A DNA stretch of 64,000 bases from Schmidtea nova. Its lineage: Eukaryota. The notes under the pieces were generated by a model. It saw only the letters and a list, made by a program, of their open reading frames with translations. It did no database searches and was not told the origin of the DNA. The translations under genes and the position numbers were made by a program. This document shows, piece by piece, positions 11,400 through 60,737 of this stretch (the first letter of the stretch is position 1; every line of letters starts with the position of its first letter). The stretch is taken from the NCBI GenBank assembly GCA_044892505.1, contig CM097882.1:324198001-324262000 (forward strand), read 5' to 3'.

Positions 11400-11860
11400 C
11401 ATCACTTGCTTAGACAGAATCCAGATTGACTTGTGTATGGGGATAGAGACTTCTTGATTTGTCCCATAACCTGGGACTCCTTTCGACGCTTGTTTCTGTC
11501 ACGCTCATTTTTACTAGGCTTGCGCTTTCCATTCGATATCCTGGATGAATCTTCGACTGGAAACAGCTCTGTCAATCTGGCTCAAGTTGGAGTACAGATA
11601 TTACCCATAAGCCAGTATTCCACACGGTAGCGATCTAACTTGACTTGTCGTTGAGGCCCATTTGGAGAGCCCTTCGCTGAATAGCCCCATCATCTAATAA
11701 TTTCTTTCCTTCCTTTATTTTTCTTGAGCCGCTCTCATCTTTTCAGGAGTGAATCAAGTCATCTCATAAAGACGGTATCGTTGAATGAATTTGTTTAGCC
11801 GAATTCACATAGTTTGATTCTCTTTTTGGAGTTCTTCGTTTTTCGCCTCAAATCGGCACA
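11400..11860 (-). pseudogene. Degenerate ORF-Y copy of the unknown cassette family
   Basis: Minus strand ...YEMT*FTPEKMRAAQEK...ALQMGLND... then a basic tail KRKPSKNERDRNKRRKE; aligns with RTWFCTEKVK...AVRLELNNC of the 39846-40415 ORF. Confidence 0.5.
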
Positions 11861-13329
11861 TTCGTTTACATATCTGTTAGAAGATGGGTTAGTATTAAAA
11901 ATTTTGAAACTAATATATTACATGACAGGGTGCAACAATTACAGGATAAATGTACATATACAAAACAAGGATTGAGTTGAGATTCTCAATGATAATTTCT
12001 GGATTATATTTATTTGTGATGACAACTCTGTTGATTTTGATTATAATATTAACAATTTTATCTTAACCATTTTGTGATCAATTTATTTTATCGTTATGAT
12101 TATAATAATCTTCATGACATCTTTGTAATTATATCAATTTATTTTATGTGATTTATTTTATTATATGTTATAATTTATGTAATTAATCTTATTTTTTATG
12201 GGATTAATTGATTTTTACTAGATGTATATTTTTATTTTAATGGGACTGTGAAAAATATATATTAATAATATAACATGACAAAGATTTAATTGAGGGAAAA
12301 CGCAATTCAAATTTTATATTTCGACAGATTCCTTGACACGATCAACCAAAAATCCCCCTAAAATATAATTAATTAATAATTCTCGCCTTCTGGGTTAATT
12401 AATATTGTTGCTGTTATTTAATTTTACACCAATAGGTGCAAATAATTTTTATTTTATTTTTGAATTCTCATTGAAAGCAGTGTAGTCAGCACGAGGCGTC
12501 GTCAGAAGTGAGAGATCTTCAAATGCAAATTATGAAAGCTCATTAAGAGCAAAACAAAAACAATTTAAAAATAAAATAATAATAATTTAAAAATAATAAA
12601 TAGTGAGTTTTGATAATAATAATAATAATAAAACATAATAATAATATAAATAATATAAATGATTGTAATAATAGAATAATAATAAATATAAATAATTTTA
12701 TTTATTTTGAAAAAGAATTCAGTAATGCCATCACAAATGTCGGGAATCAACAAAAATAACATTTTTGATTTGGTTCAAATATATCATCAATCCCCCGAAA
12801 ATTCAGATTAAATTCTATTTTAACGAATAATAATAATTAATGTTTAGTAAAAAATGATGTTGATGTGTCACACAGAATTTGTTCATTATAGTACTGGGGT
12901 TTTGATTGGCCACCTTTATAAAAACTTCCTACGAGAATATAACCATGGAAAGTTGGGATCCATGTTGGTACTGTATATGGTCGGCGCAAATCAAGTCAGC
13001 GGGTGAGCGGCTTCGAAAGAAACTACTCTTGAATTGCATTTACTTCAGGTTCTCTGGTCGATGGAATACCATGATTTTATGCGTTCCACATATTGTTCCC
13101 TCTTTGTTGGAAAGAAGGTATATCTTCCTTTGTCATCATTTCCATCAATGAACGGGAATACTCTACACACTTTTTTATGATACCATAAACAACACAATTA
13201 ATTACACGAAAACATTTATTTCTTCGGTATTTCAGCTTACATCAAAACGGAATTATTTCCGCCAATAATTCCAGTTAGGAAAGAATTTAATAGTGTCACC
13301 TGAGTTTACAACTGTTGAGAGAACTTCCG

Positions 13330-13690
13330 TTACTGGTGACGTCGACGGTGCCTAGTGCCCATATGAATCTTCTTCGTCATACTATTGACGACTTCGGTTA
13401 CCCTACCAGTGGATTGGGCAACTGATTTTGCTGGCGACGGTCTCATCCATTTCTTGTACGTCAGCGTCCAAATTAAATTGTCTTCTACAAAAGATTTGGT
13501 CACCTGCCTCTCGCAGTTTTTTAACTCTATCTTCACGGTGTCCAATTCTAACTGGACGTCCACTAGTGCCCTGTGAACCCGCTCGGTTTTCTTTAGTTGT
13601 TCCTGCATTTGACTTGGGGAGAAAACATGTTTCTTGCAGCTGCAATATGCGGTGCTTTAATTTTCCCACTTCGATCTTGTGTCCGTTGTT
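13330..13690 (-). pseudogene. ORF-Y copy (one frameshift), unknown cassette family
   Basis: GKLKHRILQLQETCFLPK then, after a shift, QEQLKKTERVHRALVDVQLELDTVKIELKNCERQVTKSFVEDNL...KIHMGTRHRRRHQ; homologous to the 16582 and 39846 ORFs. Confidence 0.7.
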
Positions 13691-14002
13691 AATCGGGTGG
13701 CTACATTTTCCTTCTGTCTTATCACAGGGAGCATTCGAAACATAAGTTAAAATTATAAAGATTCGCGCATTCCACTGCCTACAAAATATTCGAATTCCCT
13801 CTTAGTTTTCCCCAGTGTCTAGTTGCATTTATACATTAAATAAAAGAAAATCAACAACCCATTTAACAAAGAAACGTTTTATTTAATTATCAAATACTAA
13901 AATTGTGTTAATGAATAGATATGTTGGCGATATATGTCGCTTTCATAGCTGGTCACTCAAAGTTTCATCCTTCGGGGATTTCTTGGCGCTTAGAGAAGCG
14001 AT

Positions 14003-14460
14003 TCATATCCCAGATTGGGCTTCCACAGTTGAACTTATATTCTTGATATCTTCCATGAATTTCCATTCTGAGTTTACGAGAGATTCTTCAGAGTCATCTA
14101 CGAGACTCCATAATATTCTTTGCCTTGGTGGACTGGGAGAGTCCAAAATGATGATCCCCATGTTTGAAAATTCTTGATAGGAAATATTACCATACGAAAT
14201 GATGGTGTCCACAACCCACTAGAGTGGGATTTGAACAATCCATAGAAGCTCGATCTTCATATATTTATCCTTCGGAGTCATGGGCTACCTGGGACTTTCG
14301 TTCCGCCAGATCCTGTCCGGTTTTCCATACCATATAAAGAACGGACATTTTTACTGGAGCTTTTGACGCCGCCGTCTCATTTCTGCGTCCACTTGTCGGA
14401 AAACATTTGGAGGGAGTTTTTTAAGAGGACCAAACACTCGTCTCCTTTGTGCATTTGCGG
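14003..14460 (-). pseudogene. ORF-X copy (three in-frame stops), unknown cassette family
   Basis: One frame from 14458: NAQRRRVFGPLKKLPPNVFR...RNESP...LWIVQIPL*WVVDTIISYGNISYQEFSNMGIIILDSP. Confidence 0.65.
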
Positions 14461-14640
14461 TATCTGATTTTTCTATTTGTTGAGAAGATCGGATGGTTAA
14501 TCCTTCCCGTATTTCAGGTTCTCAACAAATTAAGATTAATTGTTAATCAACAAATTAAGTTGCCGATAAATAACTCCATCAAGTAAAATAAACCTGTAAA
14601 TAAATTGTAGCAATTTTCCTTTTCAAATCAATGTATAAAT

Positions 14641-14868
14641 TTATAAACATGAGAACCAAAATGAAAAACAAAAAGAAATTAGGAATGTTGATGTGTCGGA
14701 TATGGCCGGACCTCTTCTGTATAGATGTTGCGAGTTGGACTGAGGAGAATATCTTTGTAATATCGAAGAGTTTATGGATTTGAACTGTAGGATCCATCTC
14801 GGCCTGCCATTTAGGTCACGGAGATCGAGGAACCAGTTAAGTATTAGGTGTCGGTTTGTTCTTCCCAT
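14641..14868 (-). pseudogene. Additional ORF-X fragment
   Basis: LNWFLDLRDLNGRPRWILQF versus RKWFLQLNDQYGTPHWILSF at 40.8 kb. Confidence 0.65.
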
Positions 14869-15807
14869 TTTCCCACATTAATTCATGCGACGTCACTAAT
14901 TTTAATTCCAAGAATACGATCATCAGATTTTCGAAAGATAAAAATAAACTCCATAATGATATTCTCCCTCAGAGTGACGACAATGATAAGTATTATTGTA
15001 GACAACTTGAGAATTTTCTAAATATATTCATTCGTACAAATAATTTCGTGACGACAATAAACCGGGTAGAAAAGTAAATAATTATCCGCTGCATTGTCCG
15101 AGTGGCCACTTCAACTATCAAGTAGAGTACAGTAGCGAGAAATCTCCTACCATCCAGGTGAAATCGAATTCATAAGTGTCATCGAGACGAGATCAAGTAG
15201 TGCCAGATTGTTTGCACGCGCACTTGAAAGGAGAGAATAATTGAATTTTCAGAGAGTACTGATTGAACAGGGTAAGAGACGGCTAATTGAGTGAGAATGG
15301 TCGAGTGCCCTCGACGGAGTAGAATGTCGAGAAAACATAATTGATTAATATTAAAATCTATAATCATGGTAATTGAATGGAGAAGCGGGTTATTAAGATA
15401 AGCAAATTTATTCCGAGTCGTCACATACAGAATGCGAATTGACAAATATTACTAAATTATAAGGAGTGACTGAAATTACAGGAGTTAAAAAATTTGAAAT
15501 AATGTCCAAAAATTTTTGACTCAGATTTGTAAAACGTGTAGTAATCCTAGTTACCCACCTTTTGATAAATCATGCATTAAATAACTTATATATAATTATT
15601 ATAGTATTTATAAATGGACCGAGTCAGTATTAGAGTGAACACAAACATCAACGAACAACATTTTGAGATGACCGAGCTCGATGGGATTGATAATGACTGG
15701 GTAATGGCTATACCCTTAAAAACGTCCCCACGGAATTGGCGAGGGAAATTCTAACAGAACATTAGGCAACATTCGAAGCAGCGGGAACTGTCCAGCCATT
15801 TAGTTTA

Positions 15808-16065
15808 TTGCGAGACAGTCCCGATATCATCGTTTGGCATGAGAGTAGCGCCTGGCCAATCGATGTCGACAAGGTATATCCCGCTGATCTTCCGAGCTAT
15901 TTTGTCGAGACATCCACCGAGATTCCAGGTCGGTATCGAATCCATTATCGAGGGACTATCCTAAATGAGGAGTTCTTGTGTTTGGGCAGATTTGTGTTCG
16001 GCCCTGTCCCACACGAGAGCATTATCGATTCTCCGCATAGCCCTTCATCCGACCAGGAGCTATGA
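15808..16065 (+). pseudogene. Probable C-terminal part of ORF-X
   Basis: IHYRGTILNEEFLCLG resembles VRMWGVFIYENHLCWN (40.6 kb) and lies upstream of an ORF-Y copy; similarity is weak. Confidence 0.4.
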
Positions 16066-16581: not shown

Positions 16582-16974
16582 GAAGGGAAATTAAAGAAGA
16601 GAATAGCCGAATTAGAGGACAGTTATTTCTCGCCAAGCGAGATGAAAGTGGTAAAAGGAAAACTAGGACGTGCCATATGGACGATAGAGAAGCAGCAGAT
16701 CGAGCTCAATGCGGCAAAGATTGAGATGAATAACTGCCGGCGCTTTGTCTCCAAGTCATGCATCACCCAACAATTGGAAACCCTTATCCAGCCGATAACG
16801 TTTGAGAAGTGGTTTCCCACCTTGGAACCAAGGAAAGACAGTACGACGGAGATAGTCGAACCTACCAAGGCGAAAGGAAAGAGACGGAGAAAAACCCATG
16901 CTCAGTGGAGACATAAACTGAGACAGAAGCTAGCAACGGAGTTGGATAAAATACCCGCAGATTCAAATCAATGA
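16582..16974 (+). CDS. ORF-Y copy (open frame, first ATG 16642), unknown cassette family
   Basis: EGKLKKRIAELEDSYFSPSEMK...ELNAAKIEMNNCRRFVSKSCITQQLETLIQPITFEKW...KGKRRRK. Confidence 0.65.
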   Translation, partial: EGKLKKRIAELEDSYFSPSEMKVVKGKLGRAIWTIEKQQIELNAAKIEMNNCRRFVSKSCITQQLETLIQPITFEKWFPTLEPRKDSTTEIVEPTKAKGKRRRKTHAQWRHKLRQKLATELDKIPADSNQ

Positions 16975-17079
16975 ACGGGGAGTATTAGTGTAATTCACGG
17001 GTGCATAGACAGTAAAAGTTTTATGTGTATTGTAGCCCTAGAAAGTAGAGCGAGTAAAGGTTTAAGTTGTCGTAAACTT

Positions 17080-17273
17080 AAGTAGATAGGGAAAACCGTA
17101 AAATAAGAAATAGATCAAATTTTTGAAAACTACAATACACCAACACAAGTAACGATCTGACAGATGAGCAAAAACAAGAATTTACTGCACTATTAAAGAG
17201 ATATAAATGTGTTCGCGAAACATGAATACGATTTGAAATTCTGAAAAAGTATATATTATCACTACGATTATTA

Positions 17274-17316
<43 letters not shown>

Positions 17317-17660
17317 CATCATCATTGTTATTGTTGTTGCTGTTGCTATGGTGAAATGAAAATAAAATCAAAATTACAAAACAAAATCAAAAATAATTTC
17401 TTACCAAAAAACTAATATTGTTATTGTTGTTGTTGCTAGGTTGGAATGAATATAAAATATATAAAATAAAATCAAGTAGATAGGGAAAACCGTAAGATAA
17501 AAAATAGATCAAATTCTTGAAAACTACAATACACCAACACAAGTAACGATCTGACAGATGAGCAAAAACAAGAATTTACTGCACTATTAAAGAGATATAA
17601 ATGTGTTCGCGAAACATGAATACGATTTGAAATTCTGAAAAAGTATTTATTATCACTACG

Positions 17661-17692
<32 letters not shown>

Positions 17693-17853
17693 CATCATCA
17701 TCATCATCATCATTGTTGTTGTTGTTGATATGGTGGAATGAAAATAAAATCAAAATTACAAAACAAAATCAAAAATAATTTCTTACCAAAAAAATAATAT
17801 TGTTATTTTTGTTGTTGCTAGGTTGGAATGAATATAAAATATATAAAATAAAA
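17080..17853. repeat. Tandem duplication (394 bp period) containing a Gypsy pol linker fragment and an ATT/ATC microsatellite
   Basis: AAGTAGATAGGGAAAACCGTAA at 17080 and 17474. Each unit encodes NDLTDEQKQEFTALLKRYK / VFAKHEYDL, typical of the protease-RT linker. Confidence 0.8.
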
Positions 17854-20036
17854 TCAAAATCACAAAACAAAAATCAAAAATTATTTCTTACCAAAAAAAT
17901 AAATAACAAAATAATGAAATTAAGAAGGAAAAAATGCCTTTTATAGCTGCGCTGCAGCAAATCTCATTAGTGAGATTGGGAAAATAATTTGCATAATTAT
18001 CTCCAAAAAAATAATTTCAAAATCAACAGTGTGTACAATGAGCAAATAGAATTCAAATAAATAGAATTCAAAAAAATTATTTGAATTAAATTTTTAACGA
18101 AAATGGATTTGAATCCAATTAAAAAAAGAAATATTAAAAATATTAATGAAAAAGAAATATGCAATTATAAAATAAATTGTGAAAAGAAAATTTTTTTCAC
18201 TGAATTAGTAAATGCTGAAAACAATATTCTGAATAATATTTCTATTTCAATTAAATGGACAGTGAAAAAAATATTCAAAACAAACTGTTTATTTTGTTCC
18301 AAACTACTTCACCTGTTTTCATACAATAAATTAATATTTGTAGACAAAATTGAACAAAAAACATATAAAAGGTAAATAAATTACTTACATCTGAAAGGTT
18401 TTAGGATATAATGAAAGCTTTCAAAACAATTGTATACTGTCGAAATTTTTAAAAAATTGATTATATCTTTACAATTTAGCAGGGTTAATTGTATTTAGTC
18501 GGACAGCGGAAATAATTGCGGTAATTATTGGCACAAAATGATATTAAATCATTCAATAATGAGTAATGTTTGCCTAATGCAGTCATAATTTTTCGATTCA
18601 GAAATAAATTTTACCATTTGATTAACTTTTTTTGCAATATTTCCCTCGATTTAAATCTGCATTTATTGTTTGTTAACTAACATAATGTTTGTTACAATTT
18701 ACCTATAAAATATATGATATAATATAAAAAATCAACACTTAATTACTGTTTAAATAACTTTTTAATATTATTTTTAAAATTTCAAAATCAGTAATGTAAG
18801 ATTGGAAATGCTTTTGAGAAAACGAGAATAGAAGATCTGATATAGGAAAAATGGAAACAGTTTAACATATCGCGGTTTCCAGGTGAAATCTGGTAAAACA
18901 GCAACGCTAAACATTAACTAAATCAAATTTTTTTCTTTAAAACTGTCAAATGTTTGTCTATTACATTTTTTAATTTTTGTTGCTGTTCTCTTGCTGATTT
19001 GCTATTTTCACAGTCGCTTTTTTGCGCAATTCTAATTTCTATTTGTTAGATGTTACTAGAAAATATTCTAGATTATATTCATTGGATGTTATAAATAAAA
19101 ATTATTAATGCCACAATATTGTTGAATTTTTTAACAAACTTTTGTAACGAATTTTCAACTTTGAACCTAATATTTTTTTATTTAAATTTTCAAAAGAATT
19201 TAATAATTATTAATTGACATTAATTTTACATTTAAAAATATAAAATATATTTTAAAATTTACTACTTTGCATTATAACATTACATATTTAAATTTAAAGA
19301 CTCTAAAATTTTAATATTTTACAATTACTTAATATTAAAAACTTATTTATGATTTTAACAATTTAATTTTATAATATTTCAATAAAATATTTAATTATGA
19401 ACTGAAAACACCTTACACTATTATCCAAGAAATAACAACAACAACTACACTGAAGACGACACTAGGCAGTGTTGCAAACATCAAAGCCATATACGCATAC
19501 GCTTCAAAACTTGATACATAAGCATGTCATGTCATATTGCTTAAACAGTTGAATTATAACCAAAACAAAACAGCCAACTTTATTTTGTATCAAATTTGAT
19601 AATTTCACTCGGAATCTTTTTTCTGGACTAATTATTTGAAGATAGTTCTTCTTGCTTGTTTTTTTTTTATTTTTTTGCTTTTATTTTTTTACATAATTAT
19701 TTAGATTATACCTCTTTTGGTCTGCATGATAATCTTCAGTTAAAACAGACATATCTAACTATATCGCGATTATCAAGCACATCTTTTTGATTCTCACCAT
19801 CAATTATTGTGTTATAATACGTAATAAAAACATAATATATCTTGAAATGGATGTATAACCAGAAACATTGACATTGTGAGCGATTTTGATAATTTCTAAA
19901 TGATTATTAAAACTATTTTCCCAATTTTATACTTAATAAACATCCTAATTGATTGAACACAATGAAAATGGTTCAGTTTTTAATGTTAAAGTGTTGCGTA
20001 TTCAAAGTTTTGTAAATATTTAATGATTATCAATAG

Positions 20037-20783: not shown

Positions 20784-20786
<3 letters not shown>

Positions 20787-20851
<65 letters not shown>
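20787..20851. repeat. (AT)n microsatellite
   Basis: Direct reading. Confidence 0.95.
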
Positions 20852-20856
<5 letters not shown>

Positions 20857-21017
20857 TATTGGGCAAAATATGTATCCAATAATTTGGAAGCGAGAGCCAG
20901 CATAGCATGTAGAGACCATGCAAGAAGTATGCTTAAATATCTCATAAACGCCAAATAAACAAAAATAATTAGAAACACAGAAAAATAATTAATTAAAACA
21001 AAAATTAAATTGAACAA

Positions 21018-26087: not shown

Positions 26088-26769
26088 AACAAGATTAAGC
26101 AATAACCACGGAAAAACACGAACAAAACAAGTTACCAAAAAACTCAATAAAGATAGCATAAATTCAAAAAAATGTAAAAGTAAATTGTAAAAATTAAAAT
26201 TAAAGTAGTTAAAATTTATGTAAAAGATAAAATTTTGATAAAAATAAAGAATAAAAATTTATTTTAAAAAAATAAACTTATTTCAGTAAAAAGAAAATAT
26301 TTTTTTAATTAAATAGAAAGAAGCTTCTAGAAACTTTTGTTTTACTGCATCAATTTAATTAAAATGTCTCTGAACTTGGAGAAGAAGAACAGCAAAAATT
26401 GAGAAATAAGATAGTTGTTGGTGTTCCATGTGGTGGTCTATTTTTGTCAGTGTCTAGTCATGAATTACTCTTCCATGATCATATGTCCTTGAGTTACCTA
26501 GATTGTCTCGCGTTGGAACTGCATATGTTAGCGCAAATCAAGTTGGTAGGTGAGCGAATTTTGAAAGTAACTTCTCCCAATTTGCACTTGCTACGGGTTC
26601 ACTGACCACCTCGTTGGTCCATCGTTAGGGTTTACATAATCAGTTGTACTATTTCTTTTATCTATTTCTTTTATCGGGACAAGAAAACTAAGGCTGATTT
26701 CATAATACATTTATTGAAATTTTAAATGGGACAATTTTGGCCAAAAAATTAAATTCTGAAAGATTATTC

Positions 26770-27200
26770 AGGGGGTCGACTCTTCTCTCGGGTTGTTGAG
26801 CAAAAGATCGTCTTTGTCGACGGCGTCTAGACCCGATTCGGTTTTTCCTGACTAAAGAGGTTAATTAAGCATGACTGATCTGGATGACCTTGGCTTCATT
26901 AGTCTCTGGTGGTGGAAGTTTGCAGATAATCTCATCGAGCTCATGGTAAGTCGTTATTGTAACGGTACGTACCTATTTGTCTTACGTAATGATTGAATTT
27001 GGGATCTAAGCTGATATTCAATGAACTACTTTAAAACGTGATTTAACCAGTTTTTTTGGATGTCTAATAGCTTGTCGTGCTTAATCAGTCTTCTGAATTT
27101 CCCTCTCTTGATGAGCAACCGTAAGTCTCAGACCTGCAATCACATGGTCTTTTTATCCTACCGTGCTCATGACTTAATTCCTTTTGTAAATACTGTTAGA
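26770..27200 (-). pseudogene. Degenerate ORF-Y copy
   Basis: VAHQEREIQK / VLK*FIEYQLRSQIQ / RKNRIGSRRRRQRRSFA versus VARQTSEIEN / TMKDFLEQQLKPLIQ / RRNRLGAKRRRERRAYA at 39.9-40.3 kb. Confidence 0.65.
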
Positions 27201-27529
27201 GTACGACTCTTTATCCATACAGAAAGATTTTTAATGGAATTTATTTCGGTCGCCTTTAGATGGGTACGAATAGGCGCCACACACGAAGTTTAGTAAGCCT
27301 ATGAATATCCGGAGTGATCAACCCCCTCCTCAAATCTTATACCCTCAATCATACTAACCATGCACACAAAGCAAAATAAAGTCATGAAACTAAGAATAAT
27401 TTAATTAATTCAAAACTTCGCATTTAAACCCAATTCATAGAGGTTGTACGCGGCTGCTGGAAGCAATGAAAATACTTCGTGGGTCCTAATGGTGGAGGCC
27501 CATGAGGGTTCGGTTACTCTTCTTTTAGA

Positions 27530-27720
27530 TGGATGGAGGGCAAAATCGGACTTCGGTTTCTTTGCGTCTGACGTAGAATTCGGGAGGGATTAGGTGTAGA
27601 AACCCAGTCCATTGAATTCCCAGGCGGGAATGTATCCAAAATATAATACTTTTTGAGGTCGGTCTTCATAGTCCTTGAATATTACGAACCCATATGAAAA
27701 CTTATTAGAGTATTCTTTTC
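27530..27720 (-). pseudogene. Degenerate ORF-X copy
   Basis: PQKVLYFGYIPAWEFNGLGF versus PRWIIYFGFIPSRWLNELGF at 60.45 kb. Confidence 0.65.
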
Positions 27721-28539
27721 CAATGGAGACTGGCCATTGGTGACTACAGTGTCACTAAATCCTTTTTTTCACATTATTTGCCCAGATGGAAAAACAGTGC
27801 TCTCGCTATGAATTTTTTTCATCCATCAGTGCAATTTTTAGTATACTGGTTGTGAGATATCATGATGCAAAGGGTTAAGTGGCTCGAGATACTTCAGTTG
27901 CTGGTGGTATTCTTGAGATGTCAGCGCAATATTCAAGCGGATACCCACGTAGCATCATTGTCCATCGATCTATAATCTAAAATGATGAAGTGTTGGATTA
28001 CCTCGAATTAATTGGTACGAAATCTAAGATCAATAGTCACGAATCATAGGTCGTTGGCGCAGTGTCCTGGTGAAATTTCCTATTGATATTTTGAGATTAT
28101 TATAAATGAATGGTGAACTGGCGATCCAGAGTTGAAAAGTAATTAATATTGTCGAAAATTGTGAGCGGATTTTCAGTGGTTACGGATGTTTGTCGGAATT
28201 ATTTGGTGAGATTGGTTAAATCTGCCGTGCTAAGTGAATTGATCAAATCCGATTTCGTGTTCTCGTTTTGCAATTACTACGGTTTTCCAAACTCGCTCTC
28301 TAAGTGAAATATTTTATGGCCCCAAGCGGAATTATCTCTCCACGAGATCAATACTGGAAACACCCTATGTGCAGCTTTAAACCCTTTCTTCAACCTGTTT
28401 GAAAATTTATGAAGTTAATATGTTCGATTTCACTGCGCCCGCATAACTCTGAGAGTAACAACAGAGCGGCTCAACCTCGTGGCTTTTTCCACAAAAGCTG
28501 TCAACTATTTATGAATTTTACGTGGGAAAAACATACATT

Positions 28540-39845: not shown

Positions 39846-40415
39846 TCATATTTGCTGGTTCGTTGGAATGGTCTTTTGCCTCTCAGATAAACCACTGAGC
39901 AGGTCTACTTCTATTCCAAGCTTTACCGCATAAGCCCTTCTCTCTCGACGTCGCTTGGCTCCTAGACGGTTTCTCCTCTTTGTTCTCGTTGGCACAACCT
40001 TGGTCGGCTGCGTTATCGATATTTCTCTTTCCTGGGTTGTAATAACGGCCTCTTCCGTCTGTGTTTCCATGTTCTTGCGGATTGGAGTCACCCATTGATC
40101 GAACGTGCTCACTTGAATCAGCGGCTTCAGCTGTTGTTCAAGGAAATCTTTCATGGTGGCTTTTAGACAATTGTTTAACTCCAGTCGCACTGCGGTGTTT
40201 TCCCGAGCTTGCTCTTCCAACGCTCTCTCTGCACGGTCGCGTCGCTTATAGATCTCTTTCACCTTCTCAGTGCAAAACCAAGTTCTCTTCAGGTTTTCTA
40301 TTTCGGATGTCTGTCGAGCTACTAGTCGTTCTAACATACATACGCGTCTCTGTACTAGTCGGTGTTTGTTCATATCTACGGTTTTCAGTAGTTGCTCCAT
40401 CGTTTTCTCTCTCAC
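39846..40415 (-). CDS. ORF-Y, most intact copy (189 aa; helical N-terminus, Arg-rich C-terminus)
   Basis: Uninterrupted ORF with homologues at 11.4, 13.3, 16.6, 26.8 and possibly 59.5 kb. Confidence 0.7.
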   Translation of the reverse strand: MREKTMEQLLKTVDMNKHRLVQRRVCMLERLVARQTSEIENLKRTWFCTEKVKEIYKRRDRAERALEEQARENTAVRLELNNCLKATMKDFLEQQLKPLIQVSTFDQWVTPIRKNMETQTEEAVITTQEREISITQPTKVVPTRTKRRNRLGAKRRRERRAYAVKLGIEVDLLSGLSERQKTIPTNQQI

Positions 40416-40506: not shown

Positions 40507-40881
40507 CTAAGTTCCTTTACAATTATCCCAATCAACCCAATCCTGATCACACGGACTATTCACCTTCCTGACTCCATTTGGCCAAAAATGATCAGCATTC
40601 GGATTCCAACATAAGTGATTTTCATAGATAAACACTCCCCACATCCGAACGTCTAGTGTCCATGTGGCCTGGTCCTTACAAATATTCCAGGGTGAGTTCA
40701 AGAATGCCCGTCTTTCACCTGTGATCACGTCTCGGGGTTGGTCAAGTAATACAAATCCCAATCCATAGAAGATGTGTCTGGGGTTTGTCATAAACGATAA
40801 TATCCAGTGAGGAGTACCATACTGATCATTGAGCTGAAGGAACCATTTCCGATAGAGTCCATGAGTTATCTTCTTCCCACC
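40507..40881 (-). CDS. ORF-X C-terminal half (open frame, first ATG 40791)
   Basis: RKWFLQLNDQYGTPHWILSFMTNPRHIFYGLGFVLLDQP... Confidence 0.65.
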   Translation of the reverse strand, partial: GGKKITHGLYRKWFLQLNDQYGTPHWILSFMTNPRHIFYGLGFVLLDQPRDVITGERRAFLNSPWNICKDQATWTLDVRMWGVFIYENHLCWNPNADHFWPNGVRKVNSPCDQDWVDWDNCKGT

Positions 40882-41074
40882 TTATCGTGACTGAATAAGG
40901 AGCTGGGCTTTCCTTTATCTCGGGGTCCGCGTATTCCCGTTTCAAATGTCTCAAGCATCTCTCCGGCCTAGTCCGGATGATATTTGGCACTTGTGTAGGC
41001 CCTCTCGGTTCCTTCTTTAATGTTATAACCCGTCTACGGTTACGGTTTTTGTATGCATATAGTTTCTTTGACAT
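40826..41074 (-). CDS. ORF-X N-terminal half
   Basis: NRNRRRVITLKKEP...IKESP versus NAQRRRVFGPLKKLP...RNESP at 14.4 kb; overlaps the C-terminal half, which is in the +1 frame. Confidence 0.6.
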   Translation of the reverse strand: MSKKLYAYKNRNRRRVITLKKEPRGPTQVPNIIRTRPERCLRHLKREYADPEIKESPAPYSVTIRWEEDNSWTLSEMVPSAQ

Positions 41075-44525: not shown

Positions 44526-44598
<73 letters not shown>

Positions 44599-53500: not shown

Positions 53501-56500
53501 TGTGCCCATGCAGTCTGTGTCTGAGATTCACAAGAATTTGAAACTTGCAGCTGCAGCACTGCCTGTTAGAACTGATTATAAGGACTTGCTTTTGAAGGTT
53601 GTTTGTTCAACTGAGAATCGAGAATGCATGTTGCATCATTGCTCTAATTGTCCTGGTATTGATGCACTGAAATCATTTCTTGAACAGCTGTTTGATAGTG
53701 CTGATATGGATTTAGATTACATGATCAATTACAAACGATGGACCAATGCTGGTCAGTCAAAGCTGCAATCTGTAACTGAGACTGTTGCTGACTTCATTAC
53801 TTCACTTTGTACTGCTGCTAATAAAACAGCAGATCATCATTTCACGGCCAAGGCACAGTCATCCTACTTACGTAATCTGAAGGAGTCTTTATCAGTTGGA
53901 ACAGCAGTTGTGTTGCTGGATTTCGCAGAAAACTATTCATTCATCTGTCAAGATGCAGTGCAAGGCTTCCACTGGGAAACATCACAGGCCACATTGCATC
54001 CATTTGTTGTGTATTATCGTGATCTACCCAGCAATGACCTATGCAGCTTGTCCCTTTGCATTATTAGTGATGACCGTGAACATGTAACAGTTACGGTCCG
54101 TGCCTTCATTGAAATAGTGCTGAAATTTCTCAAGAGCAAAATGCCTGATTTGCAGAAAATAGTTTACTTCAGTGATGGAGCAGCAGCACAATATAAAAAC
54201 TGCAAAAACTTCAAGAATCTGTGCCTGCATAAAACAGATTTTGGCATTGAAGCAGAGTGGAATTTTTTTGCTACCAGTCATGGAAAAAGTCCTTGTGATG
54301 GTATTGGTGGCACAGTAAAGAGGCTAGTGGCAAGAGCAAGTTTGCAGGCAACTCTGCAACATCAAATACTAACACCACATCAGATGTGCGATTGGGCAAC
54401 CAAAAACATTCCAGGAATTCATTTCCTATTTGCAGCAAAGGATGACGTTGAGGTGCATCGTAGCTGTTTGGTTGAACGATTTGCTTCAATTCAAACTGTT
54501 CCTGGTACACGGTCACACCACCGGTTTGTGACAGTAAGTGGAAACAAACTCAAGATATTCAGGTTGTCATGTGATGACAGTGGTACGGCCGTCAATGTGT
54601 CACCATGACCTGGCCTGGTAGTTGAACCGGCACCAAGCATAACAGATCTGCATCCAGGACAGTTTGTGGCTGTTGTTTATGACACTGATTGGTTTATTGG
54701 GTGCATAACAGAACGCTCTGATGAACATCAAGATATCTTGTTCAAGTTCATGAACAGAACACCTACAAACAGATTAACTTGGCCATGTCGTGACGATATC
54801 TGCTGGATACCATTCACTAATGTTCTATACAATCTTCCATCACCAATGTTGTCTGGCAGCTCAGCAAGACAGTATTGCTATGATGATGTGCATTTTGCCA
54901 ATTGCAAGAAACTGTTTGATAGTAGGACTGTGTGTACATATATAAGATACCATCAGTTAACAGCATTGGCTGCATAATGAGCATACGCTGATATCACATT
55001 ACATGGTTGCTTGTATGGTTGATAAAAACAAACAGTCTGTAATTTGATTTTGTAACTTAAAACTAACTGTATTTTTTCATAAAATTTGATTGACAATTCA
55101 TTGCTATGTACAAACGCCACAGCAAAAAAATAACGAAAAACGACTTAATAAAATATGGTTTTAATTAGCTATTGATTTAGTAGGAAAGGCTTAAGACACC
55201 AACATGAAATTGTCACCATAGCTACTGCTTGCCAAGGTTAACAAGTGTGCAAAATATGAAAAGTGTGAATTACTGTCAACATGGTCATCTGGGGGTCGTA
55301 ATGCGCGCAAAAATGGACGACCGTGATTTAATGAATCGACATTGCAAATATTTTTAGGGGTAATTATCGATTCATTAACTTTAATTTTTGCCTCTTAAAA
55401 ATTAATAAATAAATTGAATAATACTTTGCGGTATTCCAGTGATTGAAGTTGCTGTTGCGACTGTATAAAATGACTGGTTTGATCATACAACTGATCATAC
55501 ATTTCTGATTGTTGGATATAATTATCCTGATCTCCAATTTGAGGTGAAGGTTCATTCATTGCATTGTTGAGTAGAATATCCGATAACAATCGCATGGTTT
55601 GATTTAGTGTTTGATTATATGCGTTTGGGTTTAGTGAATATTTCATTTGTCTTTGATCGCGTATGTTTTTCATTGGAATTGATTGATTAAGATACCGTTG
55701 AGGTGTATAAGCAACACTAATCTGATTTCTGTTGGCCATAAAATTATTAGATAACGGTTGGGCAGCGTATGAATTCATCATTAACATGTTTTTTCCACAT
55801 TCTTCTTGTCTTTTTAATATCGAATAACCATTGTATAATGTTTCTAAGGATTTAAACATTTCTGTTGAATCACCAGTTAGGTCCAAAGCTAATGCTCTAA
55901 GTGCGCGACAATATTTGAATTTAATTCCTTTGATAAATTCAATAACAATATCTTTATCAGGTTGGATTTGAAGCGTTTTCTGCAATAAACATAAAAAAGG
56001 AGTTGGAATATTATTTACACTATTAACACAGCAGATATATCTTAGCTCGCCCGTTTTGTCAACTAAAAGTTCAGGAGTCAATGCTAAGCATTTCTCTTTC
56101 CAATACGGGTGTTCATAAATTCTTGTTCTGATTATTTTTCCAGTTATATTCTGTGTATTTTTTTTGAATAGTAGGAGTATCACCAACAGTGCGATTAGCC
56201 ATTTTTAAGATAAAAATTACGTTACCAGCCATATTATTAAAATGTAAAAACTAATTGATTTGCTAATAAATAGATTACAAATAAAAGACAAATTTTATTT
56301 TAAACTTCAAACTTTTTTTACTTTTTTCAACAACTTGTCATACTTTTTATAAATCATACTTTTAATAAAAAATACTTTTAATAATAACAATAAGAAATAG
56401 TTCATAACAAAATGTTAAATTGTTTGACGGAGACACGTAGATTGAAATAATAAATAGATTTTTCGCATTGAGATTACCTAATTTTCTTCAAGAATTTATT

Positions 56501-58431
56501 AATATGAAAATATCATTCTTGGTCTATGTTTTATGATCTCTTGTTATTAATCGCTCTTTGATTGAATGGAACTGAAAGGGGAGACCAATTTGATGGATTA
56601 GACAATTCATAATCAATAAAGTTTGATTTCGAAATTATTAGAAAACTTCAGCGATTTGTTGCCATGGTTATTATTGACAAATTTAAATGGGTGCTGAGTA
56701 TCAGTAGACGTTGTAAAAAAAATCAGTATTTTTGAAAAGTATTTTCGATACAAGAATATTAGGAACAGATGTGAGAGAAGGAATGATTAGGAATGGAGAT
56801 GATGTGACAACAGAACATTACACGTGATGCATAAGGGGGCCCACAATGAGTACACTAATATTGATTAGCATGAATTCTCTATCAAAATAATAAACATTTA
56901 TGGTACTTACTAATGGGTATAACAAACATCATTCCATGTCTTTTAGGTTCTTGGCTATTCCGGGTCAAATATTGGTGAAAACTGTCTGAAGTGCAATGTT
57001 TGGACATTTTAGGGCATTCTGTATGCAAGTTACATTTAAGATAAAAACACCATTCAACTCAGCATGAAAAAATGAATAAATACTGAAAATTTCAGCCTGA
57101 TACATCTTTTAGTTTTTGAAATATTCACGTTCAAATATGGCGAAAATGTAAATGTCGTGCGAACTAGCGACTACCCTTAAAACTTTAAAATATCATATCT
57201 CGGAAAGATTTTGACCAAATGGCCTGAATTTTCCAGGAATTACTCAACTTTGTATATACTACAAATCCTGAAAATTTCAGGAAGATCTGAGATGGTGTGG
57301 TTAACAATAATCAGAATGCTGGTTGAGTTGACATGGAATGACCCAATAATTGTTCTCCCAACAATTGGTGTAATGTGCACAAAAATGTACCTCATAAAAC
57401 TAATCTAGATCTTATTGTTTTTAAAATGAAATTCGATATAAAATTCCCTTTTAGTTTTATTATTTAGAAGGATTTAAAAATACATACTTCATTAAATTAT
57501 CATTTTTTAAATTAATATTTATTTTAACTTCAATGATTTTTGCTGTTCTTTGTTTGCGTTGTGGACTAAAACTCGTTTTACTGAGTAATAGTATAAAAAA
57601 TGTTCTAAAAATTGCAAATCTTGAGATAAATTTTGTTGGCTTCTAAATATATATATATATGGTAGACATATATGGGATATATTATTGAGATTTTCATATT
57701 AACTATTTTCGCAACGGGAGATATTCTTGTATAAATAACATCACCTGTTTATATGATAATTCACATTTTAAAGCTCTAATTTCCCAGGAAACACATTACA
57801 GCACTATTGATACAATAATGCATTGTGATGAATATCCACAATTTTCTTCTATCATGTGCGCAATATTTGAATCCAATTCTAAATTAGAAGCTTTGAGTGA
57901 TTCAAAAAATATAGATGAAAGTTGTAAAGTATATAAGTATAATAATGAGAAAACAATGAATTGGTTGAAAGTTAAAGTGGATAAATTATCTTCTTATTTT
58001 TACCAAAAAAAGATCGTTTCTGATGATTCTGGACTTGCTATACCCATTTCTTTTAAGGACTGTAAGTTTTTTTTCTTTTGTGAAATGCATAAAAACTTAT
58101 CTAAATAAAAGGCACTGAAACTGACACAGATTATTCTAAGCGCTTAACAATGGAAACCAGATCAACGGCTGTCGAAATCGTTTGTGACTATATTTCACTT
58201 GAAATTGAGAAAGCGTTCAAAGAGTTTATAAATTTTAAAGATATGTTATCAGAGATTAAATTACCCCTGTCTTCTCCTATTGCGCAAAAATCCAAGTCTT
58301 TAAAATCAATTGAAGACGCTGAAAATTATTCAACTGCAAAAATTACAAAAACACGAACTACAACAAAATCGAAAATTAGTAAAGAATCTGGATTGAAATC
58401 TATAACTAATTTTTTCACTAAGAAAAATTAA
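42916..58431 (+). CDS. RNASEH2B: Ribonuclease H2 subunit B, six exons: 42916-42946, 42990-43049, 43092-43199, 43243-43310, 57788-58061, 58112-58431
   Basis: All introns GT-AG; exons sum to 861 nt = 286 aa plus stop. FIKLPNPRTG, TWIINENV, IDPLFLAIPFL, YKYNNEKTMNWLKVKV, IVCDYI and the C-terminal PIP box SGLKSITNFF follow RNASEH2B in order. Confidence 0.92.
44531..44592. repeat. (TA)n microsatellite
   Basis: Direct reading. Confidence 0.95.
45733..45774 (-). ncRNA. Minimal type I hammerhead ribozyme, U3-A8 core variant
   Basis: Minus strand AATA-C-ACAC / TTGATAA / A / GGC-TGT-GCC / GAA / ATAT palindrome / T / GTGT-TATT: stem I 8 bp with one bulge, stem II 3 bp, palindromic stem III. Confidence 0.7.
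45864..46455 (-). CDS. GIY-YIG endonuclease region in the inverted pseudo-LTR (no authentic start)
   Basis: VYKLSCQKCDATYIGETHRTFRTRLNEH...LASETFFIKKYKP. Confidence 0.8.
47056..48303 (+). pseudogene. Penelope-like reverse transcriptase; GIY-YIG part frameshifted
   Basis: RT motifs intact; 4 bp and 2 bp deletions relative to the inverted copy truncate the endonuclease. Confidence 0.85.
48624..48665 (+). ncRNA. Second hammerhead copy with a stem II mismatch
   Basis: Same sequence as 45733-45774 but AGC-TGT-GCC instead of GGC-TGT-GCC. Confidence 0.6.
49636..49823 (+). repeat. Array of six (TC)GCGTCTGT(G/A)TGCGC motifs with AT-rich spacers
   Basis: Direct reading; the same motif forms an array at 62306-62513. 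Confidence 0.85.
50020..50374 (+). pseudogene. Internally deleted HECT E3 ligase fragment (HERC3/4-like)
   Basis: TVRRDNLLDDTI...GLFEMYPESRLCWF...FTVIGRLFGLAIYNNFMID..PLVMFKTL. The KKPLKV.F.GE..DAGG..KEFF block between the two halves is missing. Runs into a gap. Confidence 0.7.
52383..54977 (+). pseudogene. Sola2 DD[D/E] transposase with two frameshifts (~53110, ~53520) and one in-frame stop (54606-54608)
   Basis: LLDFAENYSFICQDAVQGFHW..QATLHP, FSDGAAAQYKN, EWNFFATSHGKSPCDGIGGTVKR. Confidence 0.85.
55395..56202 (-). pseudogene. PRPF38A: Chimeric ORF: PRP38 N-terminal domain (about 56202-55780) fused to a Q/N-rich segment; frameshift in an A8 run at 56158-56165
   Basis: ATG at 56202 gives MANRTVGD; then KIIRTRIYE..YWKEKC..LT.EL.VDK..EL...PTPFLCL..K.LQIQPDKDIVIEFIK..FKY.R.L...LTG, colinear with PRP38A and without introns. 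Confidence 0.85.
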
Positions 58432-58667
58432 GAAATGTAATATTAATAAAATACTTATTTTTTTGGATTTCGTGTTTTTTATTTGATAACTACAAAGATT
58501 AATGAAAGAATTATAAAATTATCAGTATTAATAAAGCTGTCTTTTCCTGTTATTCGGATTTTTGATCTCACAGAATGTTTTGGAATCCTTAGGAACCATC
58601 CATTAAGGACGTCTCATTCGGAAGAGAGGGATTGGTCAACGCAAAAGGACATATACTGGGTTACCAG

Positions 58668-59145
58668 CAGGGATGGGGAATCGATTGGAAAACGATCGAC
58701 TCATGACTCCGGAGTTGATATTTTTTTTATCGACTCCAACTCCCGACTCCTTTCAGTTTCATTAAGCCACCACATGATTCCTAAAATTGATTACTTTTTT
58801 AAATCGTTGTTTTACGTTACGCCGATAAAAGAAGCTTCAGGAAATTAAAAAATATTACTCTTATATATATATATATATATATATATATAAGATAAATATG
58901 AATGAACCTACGAATTTCGAAATCCTGCTGAACAAATTTAATCATGGGCCTGGTGTGGATTTTATTTGATTAGCATTCATATTTTTCGTAACTTTAACAT
59001 GCGTGCGTGAAATAAAGAGAACTTTAATTAATTGTTTTCCGAAGTGGAAAGGAGTCGAAGAGTCGAATAATTTCTATCGACTCCGACATTGACTCCTCGA
59101 AAAACCTTCGACTTCTCGATTCCTCGACTCCAACTCCCATCACTG
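58668..59145. mobile_element. Non-autonomous hAT-type element (MITE), 478 bp
   Basis: TIRs CAGGGATGGG / CCCATCACTG; 8 bp TSD GTTACCAG (58660-58667, 59146-59153); subterminal GACTCC/GGAGTC repeats. Confidence 0.85.
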
Positions 59146-59959
59146 GTTACCAGTGGGTTAACTTCTTAATAACCATGTTCCCAAGTATATCGCGTAATCA
59201 CCTATTGTGGTGCAACTTCGGAATTGTTACACAATACCTGCCAAAATATTGAGTGCCGCTACCAGAACTGTAGTTTTTCGGGTATTGCATGTGTCAAATG
59301 AGTGTCATAGAATAATTGCTTAAATTTCTCTTCTTATCTTATTTCATATGAAACACTACTTCTATTCTGGCGGATCAATTCTCCAAAGAAAAAATATTTA
59401 GAATCTCATTCGTGATCAGATTGATAACTACAGACTCATATGAGTAGTCAACTTTAACAATTATTCACAACACTGAATATACTCGCCGGACAAATATCAT
59501 AGATTAACTCTTAATCGTAACAAAATCATTGACATACATTCAACAGCCTGGAATGTCACTGCGTCTTGTTGTTCTAAACTTTTTCAGGTGACGATGTTTT
59601 TTCCTCAAATTTCTGGTACCGTATTCTTAATTGGAAAAGGAAAACATATGTAGTTCACTTCAGACCTCCCCCCACACTCTATTCACTCTCCATCTGTAAT
59701 CTAACATCATACATTAAGAAACATTTACTAGCAGTTCACACTTCGCATCTCTTTCTCATCTCGAGTAGTATATTTACTCTTGTATTTCCTACCTGCCTTT
59801 GAGACTCAAATTTCATAAACAAAAGAACGTCGAATCAAATAAAACGTAAATTAATATATATTCATTACACAGCAAAATAATTTAGAAAAAACTTGGTATA
59901 TGAACATTAAACATTTATTGTTTTCTATAACATTCAAAATTTTCTCACGAGACTAATTC

Positions 59960-60737
59960 ATTCTATTCGGTCATCTTGCGAGTCTTGCGATTTGGAAAAG
60001 CAAACCGTCGTTGAATTTGGAATTCTTACTTACGTAGCGTTTTTGTTGGGTCGTACTCGACCACCTAGATAATAGTGCCAGGTATCGTCTGACACACGAC
60101 AAACGTAGAAGTATCCTTATAATTTTCACCCACTTGGAAGGACCATTCACGTCTTCCGAGCCAATAGACTTTCTTTACTAGTGCTTCGCAAACAGTGAAG
60201 GTCCCAGGCCTCTCTTAGCTGGAATTATCCATTCTTTGTCCCTATCGATTGGACGTGAAATGAATTGCGGTTCTGTCTTTACAATTATTTGGGTGTGGGA
60301 AATCGTTGATTTATTCCCCATCTCTAATTTAAATATAATTCTTATTGCTGGCGTATTGGTGATTACTTCAATCGGATTTCATGATGGACGACTCTCCTAT
60401 TTTAATGTTCCTGAGGTTATCAAAGAGAATGAACCCCAATTCGTTTAGCCATCTACTTGGGATAAAACCAAAATAAATTATCCAGCGAGGAAAATAGGAT
60501 GGGTCTCGTATTAAAACAAACTACATGGGTGTAGTGTCGGATGGTGATTAAATCTCGGGAGAGGGCTCCTGGGGGCCCCCTCTCTATCAAACGTTTTCGG
60601 TATGGTTCTGCTCTCACATCGCCACTTCCACCCACTGTCACTGAGCTCTGCCGACGTTCCGTGGGAGATCTTTGAGTGGCCAGGAGACTGGCACTTTTAT
60701 CTGGCCATTTCGGAAATATTTGATCTTTCTCTGACAT
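59960..60737 (-). pseudogene. Degenerate ORF-X copy
   Basis: WPLKDLPRNVGR (~60670), M*FVLIRDPSYFPRWIIYFGFIPSRWLNELGFILFDNLRN (~60530-60405). Confidence 0.65.

What the first reader, a model, noticed from the sequence alone, without database searches (positions are those of the whole stretch)
11400..60737. Unrecognised two-gene cassette (ORF-X then ORF-Y) present about six times in 64 kb
Seen: homologous peptides recur in the same order at 13.3-14.5 (-), 15.7-17.0 (+), 26.8-27.7 (-), 39.8-41.1 (-) and 59.4-60.7 (-), plus a lone ORF-Y at 11.4-11.9 (-) and a lone ORF-X piece at 14.6-14.9 (-). Copies are barely alignable as DNA but keep peptide motifs, which points to an old, diversified, once-selected coding unit. 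None sits next to an RT, transposase, Rep or capsid I can recognise, and I found no TIR, LTR or TSD bounding them. Inference: the accessory module of an undescribed mobile element or endogenous virus (for example the extra genes of giant LTR elements), or a new non-autonomous coding element.
Basis: partly seen in the sequence, partly recalled or inferred. Interest (0 to 1): 0.88.

Follow-up and report, generated by a model that had tools for sequence, protein, structure and literature searches.

The report
Decayed orphan two-gene repeat family
Two neighbouring protein-coding stretches with no known relatives recur seven times as broken, very diverged copies across 50 kb of a transposon-rich, AT-rich animal (probably flatworm) genome; they are most likely wreckage of an unclassified mobile or virus-derived element, which is real and curious but not shown to be a new kind of element.

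Summary
The similarity exists at protein level only. ORF-Y pairs reach E 1e-8 to 1e-10. Leave-one-out profiles recover four X cores at 1e-12 to 8e-4. DNA alignments score no better than shuffles. Synonymous sites are saturated (pS 0.83-0.92) while pN is about 0.5, so the proteins diverged under selection. No assembly gap touches a copy.

Every copy is defective; only ORF-Y of copy D is open. X and Y match nothing in Pfam, PHROGs, PDB sequences, PDB or BFVD folds (Y only), or 1.84 billion representative proteins (Y profile). The X searches were weaker.

None of them contains a cassette, and no shared termini were found.

Cassette GC3 is 0.41-0.56, against 0.24-0.31 in host-like exons and 0.29-0.38 in resident transposons.

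Best reading (0.5): independently inserted relics of a diversified mobile or virus-derived family, with Y a coiled-coil protein carrying a basic tail. Main rival (0.3): a lineage-specific host gene cluster, mostly pseudogenes. The class is unresolved, because this genome and Repbase/Dfam could not be searched.

The parts
40510..41074 (-). Copy D, ORF-X. It has a basic N-terminus and a conserved core. It is broken by at least 1 frameshift and is the best-kept X in the window.
   Evidence: (leave-one-out E 1e-12).
39846..40400 (-). Copy D, ORF-Y. It is open for 184 codons from the first ATG (191 codons stop to stop) and is the only unbroken gene of the family in the window.
   Evidence: The AlphaFold model shows two long helices, a disordered linker and a basic C-terminal helix.
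15614..16062 (+). Copy B, ORF-X, with at least 1 break. The N-terminal motif is present. Homology of the core is not statistically supported.
16582..16974 (+). Copy B, ORF-Y. The conserved part is one open stretch of 130 codons. The N-terminal 35-40 residues seen in D have no in-frame counterpart. An AT-rich stretch of 0.3-0.5 kb separates it from X.
14006..14521 (-). Copy A, ORF-X, with at least 2 breaks.
   Evidence: (E 0.02, top non-member).
13330..13801 (-). Copy A, ORF-Y, with at least 1 frameshift.
14644..14877 (-). Lone ORF-X core fragment (copy A2). It is truncated on both sides and lies head to head with copy B.
   Evidence: (E 8e-4).
27593..27751 (-). Copy C, recognisable ORF-X core. 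The rest of X is decayed.
   Evidence: (E 7e-6).
26703..27336 (-). Copy C, ORF-Y. It is spread over several frames, with at least 3 breaks. The tail is well kept.
   Evidence: tail E 5e-5; 47% identity to the D tail over 36 residues, with colinear weak pieces.
60371..60805 (-). Copy E, ORF-X, with at least 2 breaks.
   Evidence: (E 2e-7).
59974..60310 (-). Copy E, ORF-Y relic. It has at least 2 breaks and is about 0.27 kb shorter than in A and D. It is weakly supported.
   Evidence: (colinear weak matches only).
11405..11917 (-). Copy F, lone ORF-Y relic with at least 2 breaks. No X is recognisable upstream. It is weakly supported.
   Evidence: E 0.015 and 0.08, colinear; GC island.
12952..13069 (-). 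R3, a non-coding block downstream of ORF-Y in copy A. It is 74% identical to its counterpart in copy C.
   Evidence: It has no stable fold.
26500..26616 (-). R3, the same block downstream of ORF-Y in copy C, in the same orientation.

Best explanation
The unit is an intron-less coding module of about 1.25 kb that sits in a GC-richer island of 2-2.7 kb.

ORF-X has about 190-230 codons. It has a basic N-terminus with a short PLK..P.N-type motif, then a core rich in W, F, Y and G. ORF-Y has about 185 codons. It has two long helices likely to form a coiled coil or helical hairpin, a disordered linker, and an Arg/Lys-rich C-terminal helix.

I read the seven copies as dead relics of separate insertions from long-diverged lineages of one selfish family. 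That family is either transposon-like (about 0.3) or virus-derived (about 0.2). In life, Y would oligomerise through its helices and bind nucleic acid, or enter the nucleus, through its basic tail. X would be its structural partner. Together they would resemble a Gag, ORF1p or nucleocapsid-type pair that coats the element's own nucleic acid. Replication enzymes would be supplied in trans or would lie on parts not preserved here.

Shown: the homology, the colinearity, selection on the protein during divergence, the decay of all copies, the foreign codon composition, and the absence of detectable relatives. Inferred: the mobility, the independent insertions, and the roles of the two proteins.
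For: Homology and order of X and Y are supported.

The divergence was driven at protein level. pS is 0.83-0.92 against pN 0.46-0.52. Identity by codon position is 0.44-0.56 at positions 1 and 2 and about 0.3 at position 3. DNA alignment scores equal those of shuffles.

Every copy is broken or truncated, to different degrees: D least, and C, E and F most. This fits separate arrival followed by decay.

No introns are seen. There are partial copies (a lone Y, a lone X core) and a head-to-head pair.

GC3 is 0.41-0.56 in all copies, against 0.24-0.31 in host-like exons and 0.29-0.38 in resident gypsy and Penelope-like ORFs. The GC islands are delimited against AT-rich flanks.

A non-coding block, R3, is kept at 74% identity downstream of Y in two copies whose coding DNA cannot be aligned.

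The Y model shows long helices and a basic terminal helix, with 57 residues at pLDDT above 90.

No relative was found in annotated proteomes, flatworm ones included. The Y profile against 1.84 billion representative proteins gave 0 hits. The word-based searches gave 0 hits.
Against: No termini, TSD, LTR, TIR, poly(A) tail or linked RT, transposase, Rep or capsid gene was found for any copy.

Seven copies in 50 kb, four of them within 5.6 kb and six of seven on one strand, look like a local gene cluster as much as like insertions.

All pairs are about equally distant (about 30% amino-acid identity). No two copies belong to the same recent subfamily, which is unusual for a transposon burst.

The composition contrast rests on only three host-like coding stretches.

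The X model is useless (pLDDT 43). The proposed roles of the proteins rest on architecture alone, with no fold or sequence match.

The window's own ORFs are absent from the protein and contig collections, so genome-wide copy number and distribution are unknown.
Confidence: 0.5

Rival explanations
1. The copies form a lineage-specific host gene family that grew by old local duplications (a birth-and-death cluster). Most members in this window are now pseudogenes. X and Y would be two adjacent genes, or one gene with a variable linker.
For: The clustering is tight and six of seven copies lie on one strand. After resident transposons are discounted, the spacing is 2-8 kb. The divergence is deep but was under selection. 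No mobile-element hallmarks were found. Host genes lie nearby: RNase H2B-like exons right next to copy E.
Against: No copy is intact, and decay is very uneven between copies. There are no introns. GC3 is far from that of the host-like exons in the window. There are no orthologues in any annotated proteome, including many flatworms. Neighbouring copies are no more alike than distant ones.
Confidence: 0.3
2. The cassette is an accessory module carried inside giant Ty3/gypsy-type LTR elements, such as the Burro elements of planarians.
For: The host is probably a flatworm: the best hits of the PRP38-like ORF are flatworm proteins. Burro-type elements are reported to carry accessory ORFs of unknown function (PMC6431247). 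Gypsy elements are present in the window.
Against: The two gypsy elements here are small (5.1 and 3.8 kb) and complete. They are bounded by their own LTRs, with a clear target-site duplication at gypsy-2 and a probable short one at gypsy-1. Neither contains a cassette. No long LTR pair encloses any cassette. The only flanking direct repeat, R1 around copy D, is a short dispersed repeat found on both strands, without an adjacent primer-binding site. Profile comparison of X and Y with the gypsy gag gives probability 0.1. Several cassettes within 5.6 kb cannot all be internal to one element.
Confidence: 0.05
3. The similarity is due to chance or low-complexity sequence, and there is no real family.
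For: The support for the F and E Y relics and for the B X core is weak taken alone.
Against: Pairwise and leave-one-out E-values reach 1e-19, with the next unrelated segment at E > 0.1. Motif counts are 2-3 observed against 0.00-0.05 expected in shuffles. Order, strand and spacing are conserved.
Confidence: 0.01

Closest known systems
Gag, ORF1p and nucleocapsid-type structural proteins of retroelements and small viruses
   Same: These are short intron-less ORFs. They combine an oligomerising helical part with an Arg/Lys-rich nucleic-acid-binding tail. They occur as many decayed copies in a transposon-rich region.
   Different: X and Y have no zinc knuckle, RRM or capsid-fold match, and no sequence or profile similarity to the window's own gypsy gag. 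No RT or other enzyme is adjacent. In Y the basic part lies C-terminal to the coiled coil.
Clusters of non-retroviral endogenous viral elements among LTR retrotransposons (described in arthropod piRNA clusters; my own knowledge, not tested here)
   Same: Several deeply diverged, defective copies of the same viral-type gene set lie in both orientations, interleaved with gypsy-type elements. Their codon composition is unlike the host's.
   Different: No viral homologue was found for Y by sequence (1.84 billion proteins) or by fold (BFVD). X was tested only weakly. Small-RNA data are not available.
Accessory ORFs of giant gypsy-like Burro elements of planarians (PMC6431247)
   Same: The host is possibly of the same type (a flatworm). 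Both are orphan ORFs associated with repeats.
   Different: There is no giant element, long LTR or polyprotein context here. Burro's reported accessory domains (MATH, BIR, ankyrin, BCL2-like) would have given Pfam hits, and X and Y give none.
Lineage-specific tandem gene families with many pseudogenes
   Same: Both show local clustering, mostly one orientation, and old divergence under purifying selection.
   Different: There is no intact member here, no introns, and a codon composition unlike the neighbouring host exons. Partial copies and head-to-head copies are present.

Membership tests
LTR retrotransposon (Ty3/gypsy), internal or accessory ORF | A pair of LTRs bounding the unit, with a primer-binding site, a polypurine tract and a target-site duplication | tested here: not met
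   Self-comparisons and tiled nhmmer of 2.5-kb flanks found only R1 around copy D. R1 is a 220-bp dispersed repeat present on both strands. The gypsy primer-binding sequence occurs only at the two gypsy elements.
LTR retrotransposon (Ty3/gypsy), internal or accessory ORF | Linked gag (capsid and zinc knuckle) and pol (PR-RT-RH-IN), or similarity of X and Y to gag | tested here: not met
   Pfam gives no hit for X or Y. hhalign against the window's gag gives probability 0.1. tblastn with the resident pol and gag finds no relic beside any cassette.
Non-LTR retrotransposon (LINE) ORF1 | An ORF1 (coiled coil plus RRM/CTD or zinc knuckle) followed by ORF2 with endonuclease and RT, with a 3' poly(A) or simple-repeat tail | tested here: not met
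   No RT or endonuclease ORF lies downstream of Y. There is no RRM or zinc-knuckle hit. There is no clear poly(A): only a short A-rich stretch follows the stop of D-Y, and the GC-richer island continues beyond it.
Penelope-like element | RT with a GIY-YIG endonuclease in the same unit | tested here: not met
   The only Penelope-like element lies at 45.7-48.7 kb. It is separate from all cassettes, and its upstream ORF is unrelated to X and Y.
DNA transposon (TIR class) | Terminal inverted repeats, a target-site duplication and a transposase | tested here: not met
   No inverted repeats bound any cassette. There is no transposase domain. The TIR-bounded element at 51.6-57.3 kb holds no cassette.
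Endogenous viral element | Detectable homology of the ORFs to proteins of a virus family | tested here: inconclusive
   Y gave 0 hits in 1.84 billion proteins and no BFVD or PDB fold match. X was tested only with Pfam, PHROGs, a PDB profile, a word-based search and one metagenome pattern scan, all blank. The viral contig collection was not scanned (a referred step).
Host multigene family | Intact members, orthologues in related species, and host-like gene structure and codon usage | tested here: not met
   Within the window no copy is intact. There are no homologues in annotated proteomes. There are no introns. GC3 is 0.41-0.56 against 0.24-0.31 in host-like exons. Intact members elsewhere in the genome could not be looked for.
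Host multigene family | Transcription and processing as ordinary mRNAs | not testable with these tools

The most novel reading that the evidence does not exclude
X and Y are the only genes of a so far undescribed kind of integrated element of flatworm-like animals. It would be either a non-autonomous coding element outside the known transposon classes, or the remains of an unknown virus lineage repeatedly archived in a transposon-rich trap locus. Its codon composition would still betray an origin outside the host genome.
Probability: 0.15. Interest if true: 0.7.

Novelty: new member of a known kind. Interest (0 to 1): 0.4.

Why it matters
If the family proves to be mobile or virus-derived, it adds two orphan protein families and possibly a new element type. 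It would do so in a group of animals whose repeats are largely unclassified and whose viruses are barely known. A locus holding seven deeply diverged copies would be a natural place to look for small-RNA-based genome defence.

If it proves to be a host gene cluster, it is an ordinary fast-evolving, lineage-specific family. In either case the present copies are non-functional relics. The immediate value is as seed alignments for annotating this repeat genome-wide.

Tried and rejected
Sequence and profile searches that came back blank:
- Pfam at lax thresholds on ten X and Y pieces, and on flank ORFs.
- PHROGs.
- PDB, by single sequence and by profile.
- Word-based search of 5.8 billion proteins with Y and with the X alignment.
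- Exhaustive HMMER search of 1.84 billion representatives with the Y profile.
- Metagenome pattern scan with an X alignment: 103 pattern matches, none confirmed. A first attempt failed for lack of a conserved stretch.

Structure:
- The X model has pLDDT 43 and is unusable, so I ran no fold search on it.
- The Y model has pLDDT 69.5 and is helical. Foldseek against PDB and BFVD gave nothing below E 0.4.

Searches for shared termini and linked genes:
- blastn at word sizes 11 and 7, nhmmer with single repeats, and 250-nt tiles of all flanks. These gave only R1 (a dispersed short repeat), R2 (an AT-rich repeat shared by D and 29.3-29.6 kb) and R3 (shared by A and C).
- R1 as an LTR: rejected.
- R3 as a structured RNA: rejected, with z-scores of -0.3 and +0.45.
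- Rfam and tRNA scans of the window: nothing.
- Exact look-ups of window ORFs in contig collections, to name the genome: nothing on record.
- A third conserved ORF upstream of X: none found.
- A sub-threshold Pfam hit (Herpes_UL52-type zinc finger, 17.9 bits against a cut-off of 21) about 1 kb upstream of X in copy D. It has no counterpart at other copies and no PDB match, so I treated it as probable chance.

Steps not done:
Full-length or fused relatives outside the length window of the word-based search may therefore have been missed.
- I did not scan the viral contig collection.

Disclosure of what my outputs contain:
- Early exploratory scripts printed stop-to-stop reading-frame segments with coordinates.
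- Frame ends can be inferred from them.
- Local profile files were used only for detection.


Full report
**Setting**

The window is AT-rich (GC about 0.31) and dense in repeats. Pfam and self-comparison show four resident elements:
- a complete Ty3/gypsy element at 21017-26087 (-), with identical 326-bp LTRs and open gag and pol;
- a second gypsy element at 33042-36889 (+), with 175-bp LTRs and target-site duplication CTAGG;
- a Penelope-like element at 45.7-48.7 kb, in inverted partial copies;
- an element bounded by inverted arms of about 520 bp at 51585-57347.

Host-like coding pieces are also present. There are RNase H2 subunit B-like exons at 57689-58428 and a HECT fragment near 50.2 kb. 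A PRP38-like ORF finds its best matches in flatworm PRP38 proteins at 53-61% identity. The host is therefore probably a platyhelminth, but that is an inference. None of four window ORFs is on record in the contig collection. This genome is apparently not in the searchable libraries.

**Gaps**

The five N runs all lie between copy D and copy E, more than 4 kb from any cassette piece. No cassette ORF or alignment touches them, and I did not fill them. They matter only for three things: the D-E distance, the outer ends of the Penelope-like element, and a 244-codon 'ORF' at 49885-50619. That ORF runs through a gap and is an artefact.

Yes.

*ORF-Y.* Copy D is an open stretch of 191 codons. It matches copy B at tblastn E 1e-10 and copy A at 2e-5 within the window. 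All three pairs are significant by blastp and align convincingly (alignment A1). In leave-one-out profile searches of all 1898 stop-to-stop segments of the window, each omitted Y returns at 7e-14 to 5e-19. The tail of copy C, never in the model, returns at 5e-5. Unrelated segments start at E > 0.1.

*ORF-X core.* The same leave-one-out test returns D at 1e-12, E at 2e-7, C at 7e-6, the lone fragment near 14.7 kb at 8e-4, and A at 0.02 (first non-member). The B core is not recovered. B is tied to the family by a true Y and by the short N-terminal motif. That motif occurs as PLKKLPPN, PLKTSPRN and PLKDLPRN in A, B and E and nowhere else in six frames, against 0.00 expected in shuffles.

*Weak parts.* The Y relics of E and F rest on weak but colinear matches and on GC islands.

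*Layout.* X always lies upstream of Y on the same strand. The X-core to Y-core distance is about 660-670 nt in A and D. It is shorter in E and longer in B, where an AT-rich stretch intervenes.

**Protein-level, not DNA-level, conservation**

Local DNA alignments of the Y copies score no better than shuffles. On the protein-guided codon alignment, identity is 0.44-0.48 at first positions, 0.50-0.56 at second positions and 0.27-0.33 at third positions. The proportion of synonymous differences is 0.83-0.92, which is saturated. The proportion of non-synonymous differences is 0.46-0.52. The copies therefore diverged while the proteins were under purifying selection. A ratio cannot be computed because dS is saturated.

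**State of the copies**

All are defective. The counts below are minimums, taken from the number of reading frames that carry colinear similarity.

| Copy | ORF-X | ORF-Y |
|---|---|---|
| D | at least 1 frameshift | intact |
| B | at least 1 break | conserved part open; lacks the N-terminal 35-40 residues seen in D |
| A | at least 2 breaks | at least 1 break |
| C | only the core recognisable | at least 3 breaks |
| E | at least 2 breaks | at least 2 breaks plus an internal shortening |
| F | absent | at least 2 breaks |
| Lone fragment (A2) | core only, truncated on both sides | absent |

Places of breaks are deliberately not listed.

**What the proteins look like**

Neither X nor Y has a match in any of the following:
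- Pfam or PHROGs;
- PDB sequences, by single sequence or by profile;
- the word-based search of 5.8 billion proteins;
- for the Y profile, an exhaustive HMMER pass over 1.84 billion representative proteins;
- for X, a metagenome pattern scan.

The AlphaFold model of Y (mean pLDDT 69.5, with 57 residues above 90) shows helices at residues 2-48 and 52-105, a disordered linker, and a basic helix at residues 147-182. Foldseek finds nothing meaningful in PDB or BFVD. The X model is unreliable (pLDDT 43) and I did not use it.

I never joined the two frames of X, or X with Y. Fused or full-length relatives outside the length window of the word-based tool could therefore have been missed.

**Context and boundaries**

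No cassette lies inside any of the resident elements, which have their own clean ends. tblastn with the resident gag, pol, Penelope-like and other element proteins finds no relic next to a cassette.

Tiled nhmmer searches of 2.5 kb on each side of every copy found no shared termini. What they did find:
- R1 is a 220-bp dispersed repeat that happens to flank copy D in direct orientation. It also occurs inverted elsewhere and lacks LTR features.
- R2 is an AT-rich repeat downstream of D and at 29.3-29.6 kb.
- R3 is a block of about 100 nt, 74% identical, that lies 0.1-0.3 kb downstream of Y in A and C in the same orientation and nowhere else. It is better conserved than the coding DNA and has no stable fold. 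It remains unexplained.

**Composition**

Every cassette piece has GC 0.39-0.50 and GC3 0.41-0.56. The host-like exons have GC3 0.24-0.31. The resident gypsy and Penelope-like ORFs have GC3 0.29-0.38. At 100-nt resolution the copies sit in GC-richer islands of about 2-2.7 kb (C and D) within AT-rich surroundings. Sequence that had long drifted in this genome would be expected to approach the background. This speaks for a foreign compositional history. The host reference is only three short coding stretches, however.

**Interpretation**

Several points fit best with independently inserted relics of a diversified selfish family, either transposon-like or virus-derived (confidence 0.5):
- uniform deep divergence under selection;
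- uneven decay between copies;
- absence of introns;
- partial and head-to-head copies;
- foreign GC3;
- no orthologue in any annotated proteome.

By architecture alone, Y looks like an oligomerising protein with a nucleic-acid-binding or nuclear-targeting tail, and X looks like its structural partner. This is an analogy to Gag, ORF1p or nucleocapsid-type pairs, not a membership claim. Every defining feature of the known transposon classes that I could test was not met.

The main rival (0.3) is a lineage-specific host gene cluster that is now mostly pseudogenes. It is favoured by the tight clustering (four copies in 5.6 kb), by six of seven copies lying on one strand, and by the lack of any mobility hallmark. 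Chance is excluded for the core set.

**Verdict**

The family is real and homologues are undetectable with the libraries at hand. All copies seen are dead. The element class is unresolved, and neither this genome nor Repbase/Dfam could be searched. Unclassified repeats with orphan ORFs are common in such genomes. The most novel reading still open is a new kind of integrated element or an unknown virus lineage, at about 0.15.

Consensus lines printed by the alignment tools were not used.

Noticed in passing
21017-26087 (-): A complete, apparently young Ty3/gypsy element. It has identical 326-bp LTRs, an open gag (24723-25802, zinc knuckle) and an open pol (21340-24675, PR-RT-RH-IN). A primer-binding sequence lies next to the 5' LTR, and there is a probable 4-bp target duplication.
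   Followed up: partly
33042-36889 (+): A second, shorter gypsy element. It has 175-bp LTRs at 98% identity, the 5-bp target duplication CTAGG, the same primer-binding sequence as the first element, and an open 954-codon pol. The gag-like region upstream lies in several frames.
   Followed up: partly
45704-48694: A Penelope-like element (RT 47056-48303 on +; GIY-YIG 45864-46496 on - and 48304-48531 on +). It is arranged as inverted partial copies with 750-bp arms at 97.6% identity. One outer end stops exactly at an assembly gap (48695) and the other lies about 45 nt from one (45658), so its true extent is unknown.
   Followed up: partly
51585-57347: A unit bounded by inverted arms of about 520 bp (93% identity). 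It holds orphan ORFs spanning 52353-54974 (+), with only a weak HTH_23 hit, and a PRP38-like ORF at 55395-56186 (-). The first half of that ORF is 53-61% identical to flatworm PRP38. This may be a DNA transposon carrying a captured host gene fragment.
   Followed up: partly
57689-58428 (+): RNase H2 subunit B-like coding pieces (Pfam RNase_H2-Ydr279, E 1.5e-8). This is probably a host gene lying next to cassette copy E, with very low GC3 (0.24).
   Followed up: no
49885-50619 (+): A HECT-domain fragment (E 2e-7) runs into the gap at 50375-50599. The 244-codon ORF listed across the gap is an artefact of the N run.
   Followed up: partly
38637-38857, 42468-42709, 10869-10999, 37252-37323: R1, a short dispersed repeat of about 220 bp. 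Two direct copies (75% identical) flank cassette copy D, and two weaker copies lie in the opposite orientation, one of them 0.4 kb downstream of relic F. It has no LTR features and its nature is unknown.
   Followed up: partly
42038-42244 (-): A sub-threshold Pfam hit to the Herpes_UL52/PrimPol-type zinc-finger domain (17.9 bits, cut-off 21, E 0.003), about 1 kb upstream of ORF-X in copy D on the same strand. It has no PDB match and no counterpart at other copies, so it is probably chance. It would matter if it recurred next to other copies genome-wide.
   Followed up: partly
17071-17857; 10329-10766; 1307-1686: Tandem repeats with units of about 395, 217 and 157 bp (93%, 99% and 89% identity). 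The first starts 0.1 kb downstream of cassette copy B.
   Followed up: no
6266-7083 (-) and 37363-37830 (+): Old gypsy gag-like relics. They are an inverted DNA match at 68% identity, and the second is similar to the gag of the element at 21-26 kb.
   Followed up: no
30191-30274 (-) and 29250-29595: A faint peptide resembling the N-terminal motif region of ORF-X (9 of 16 residues shared with copy E), lying upstream of a copy of the AT-rich repeat R2. In copy D, R2 lies downstream of ORF-Y. This may be an eighth, internally deleted relic.
   Followed up: partly
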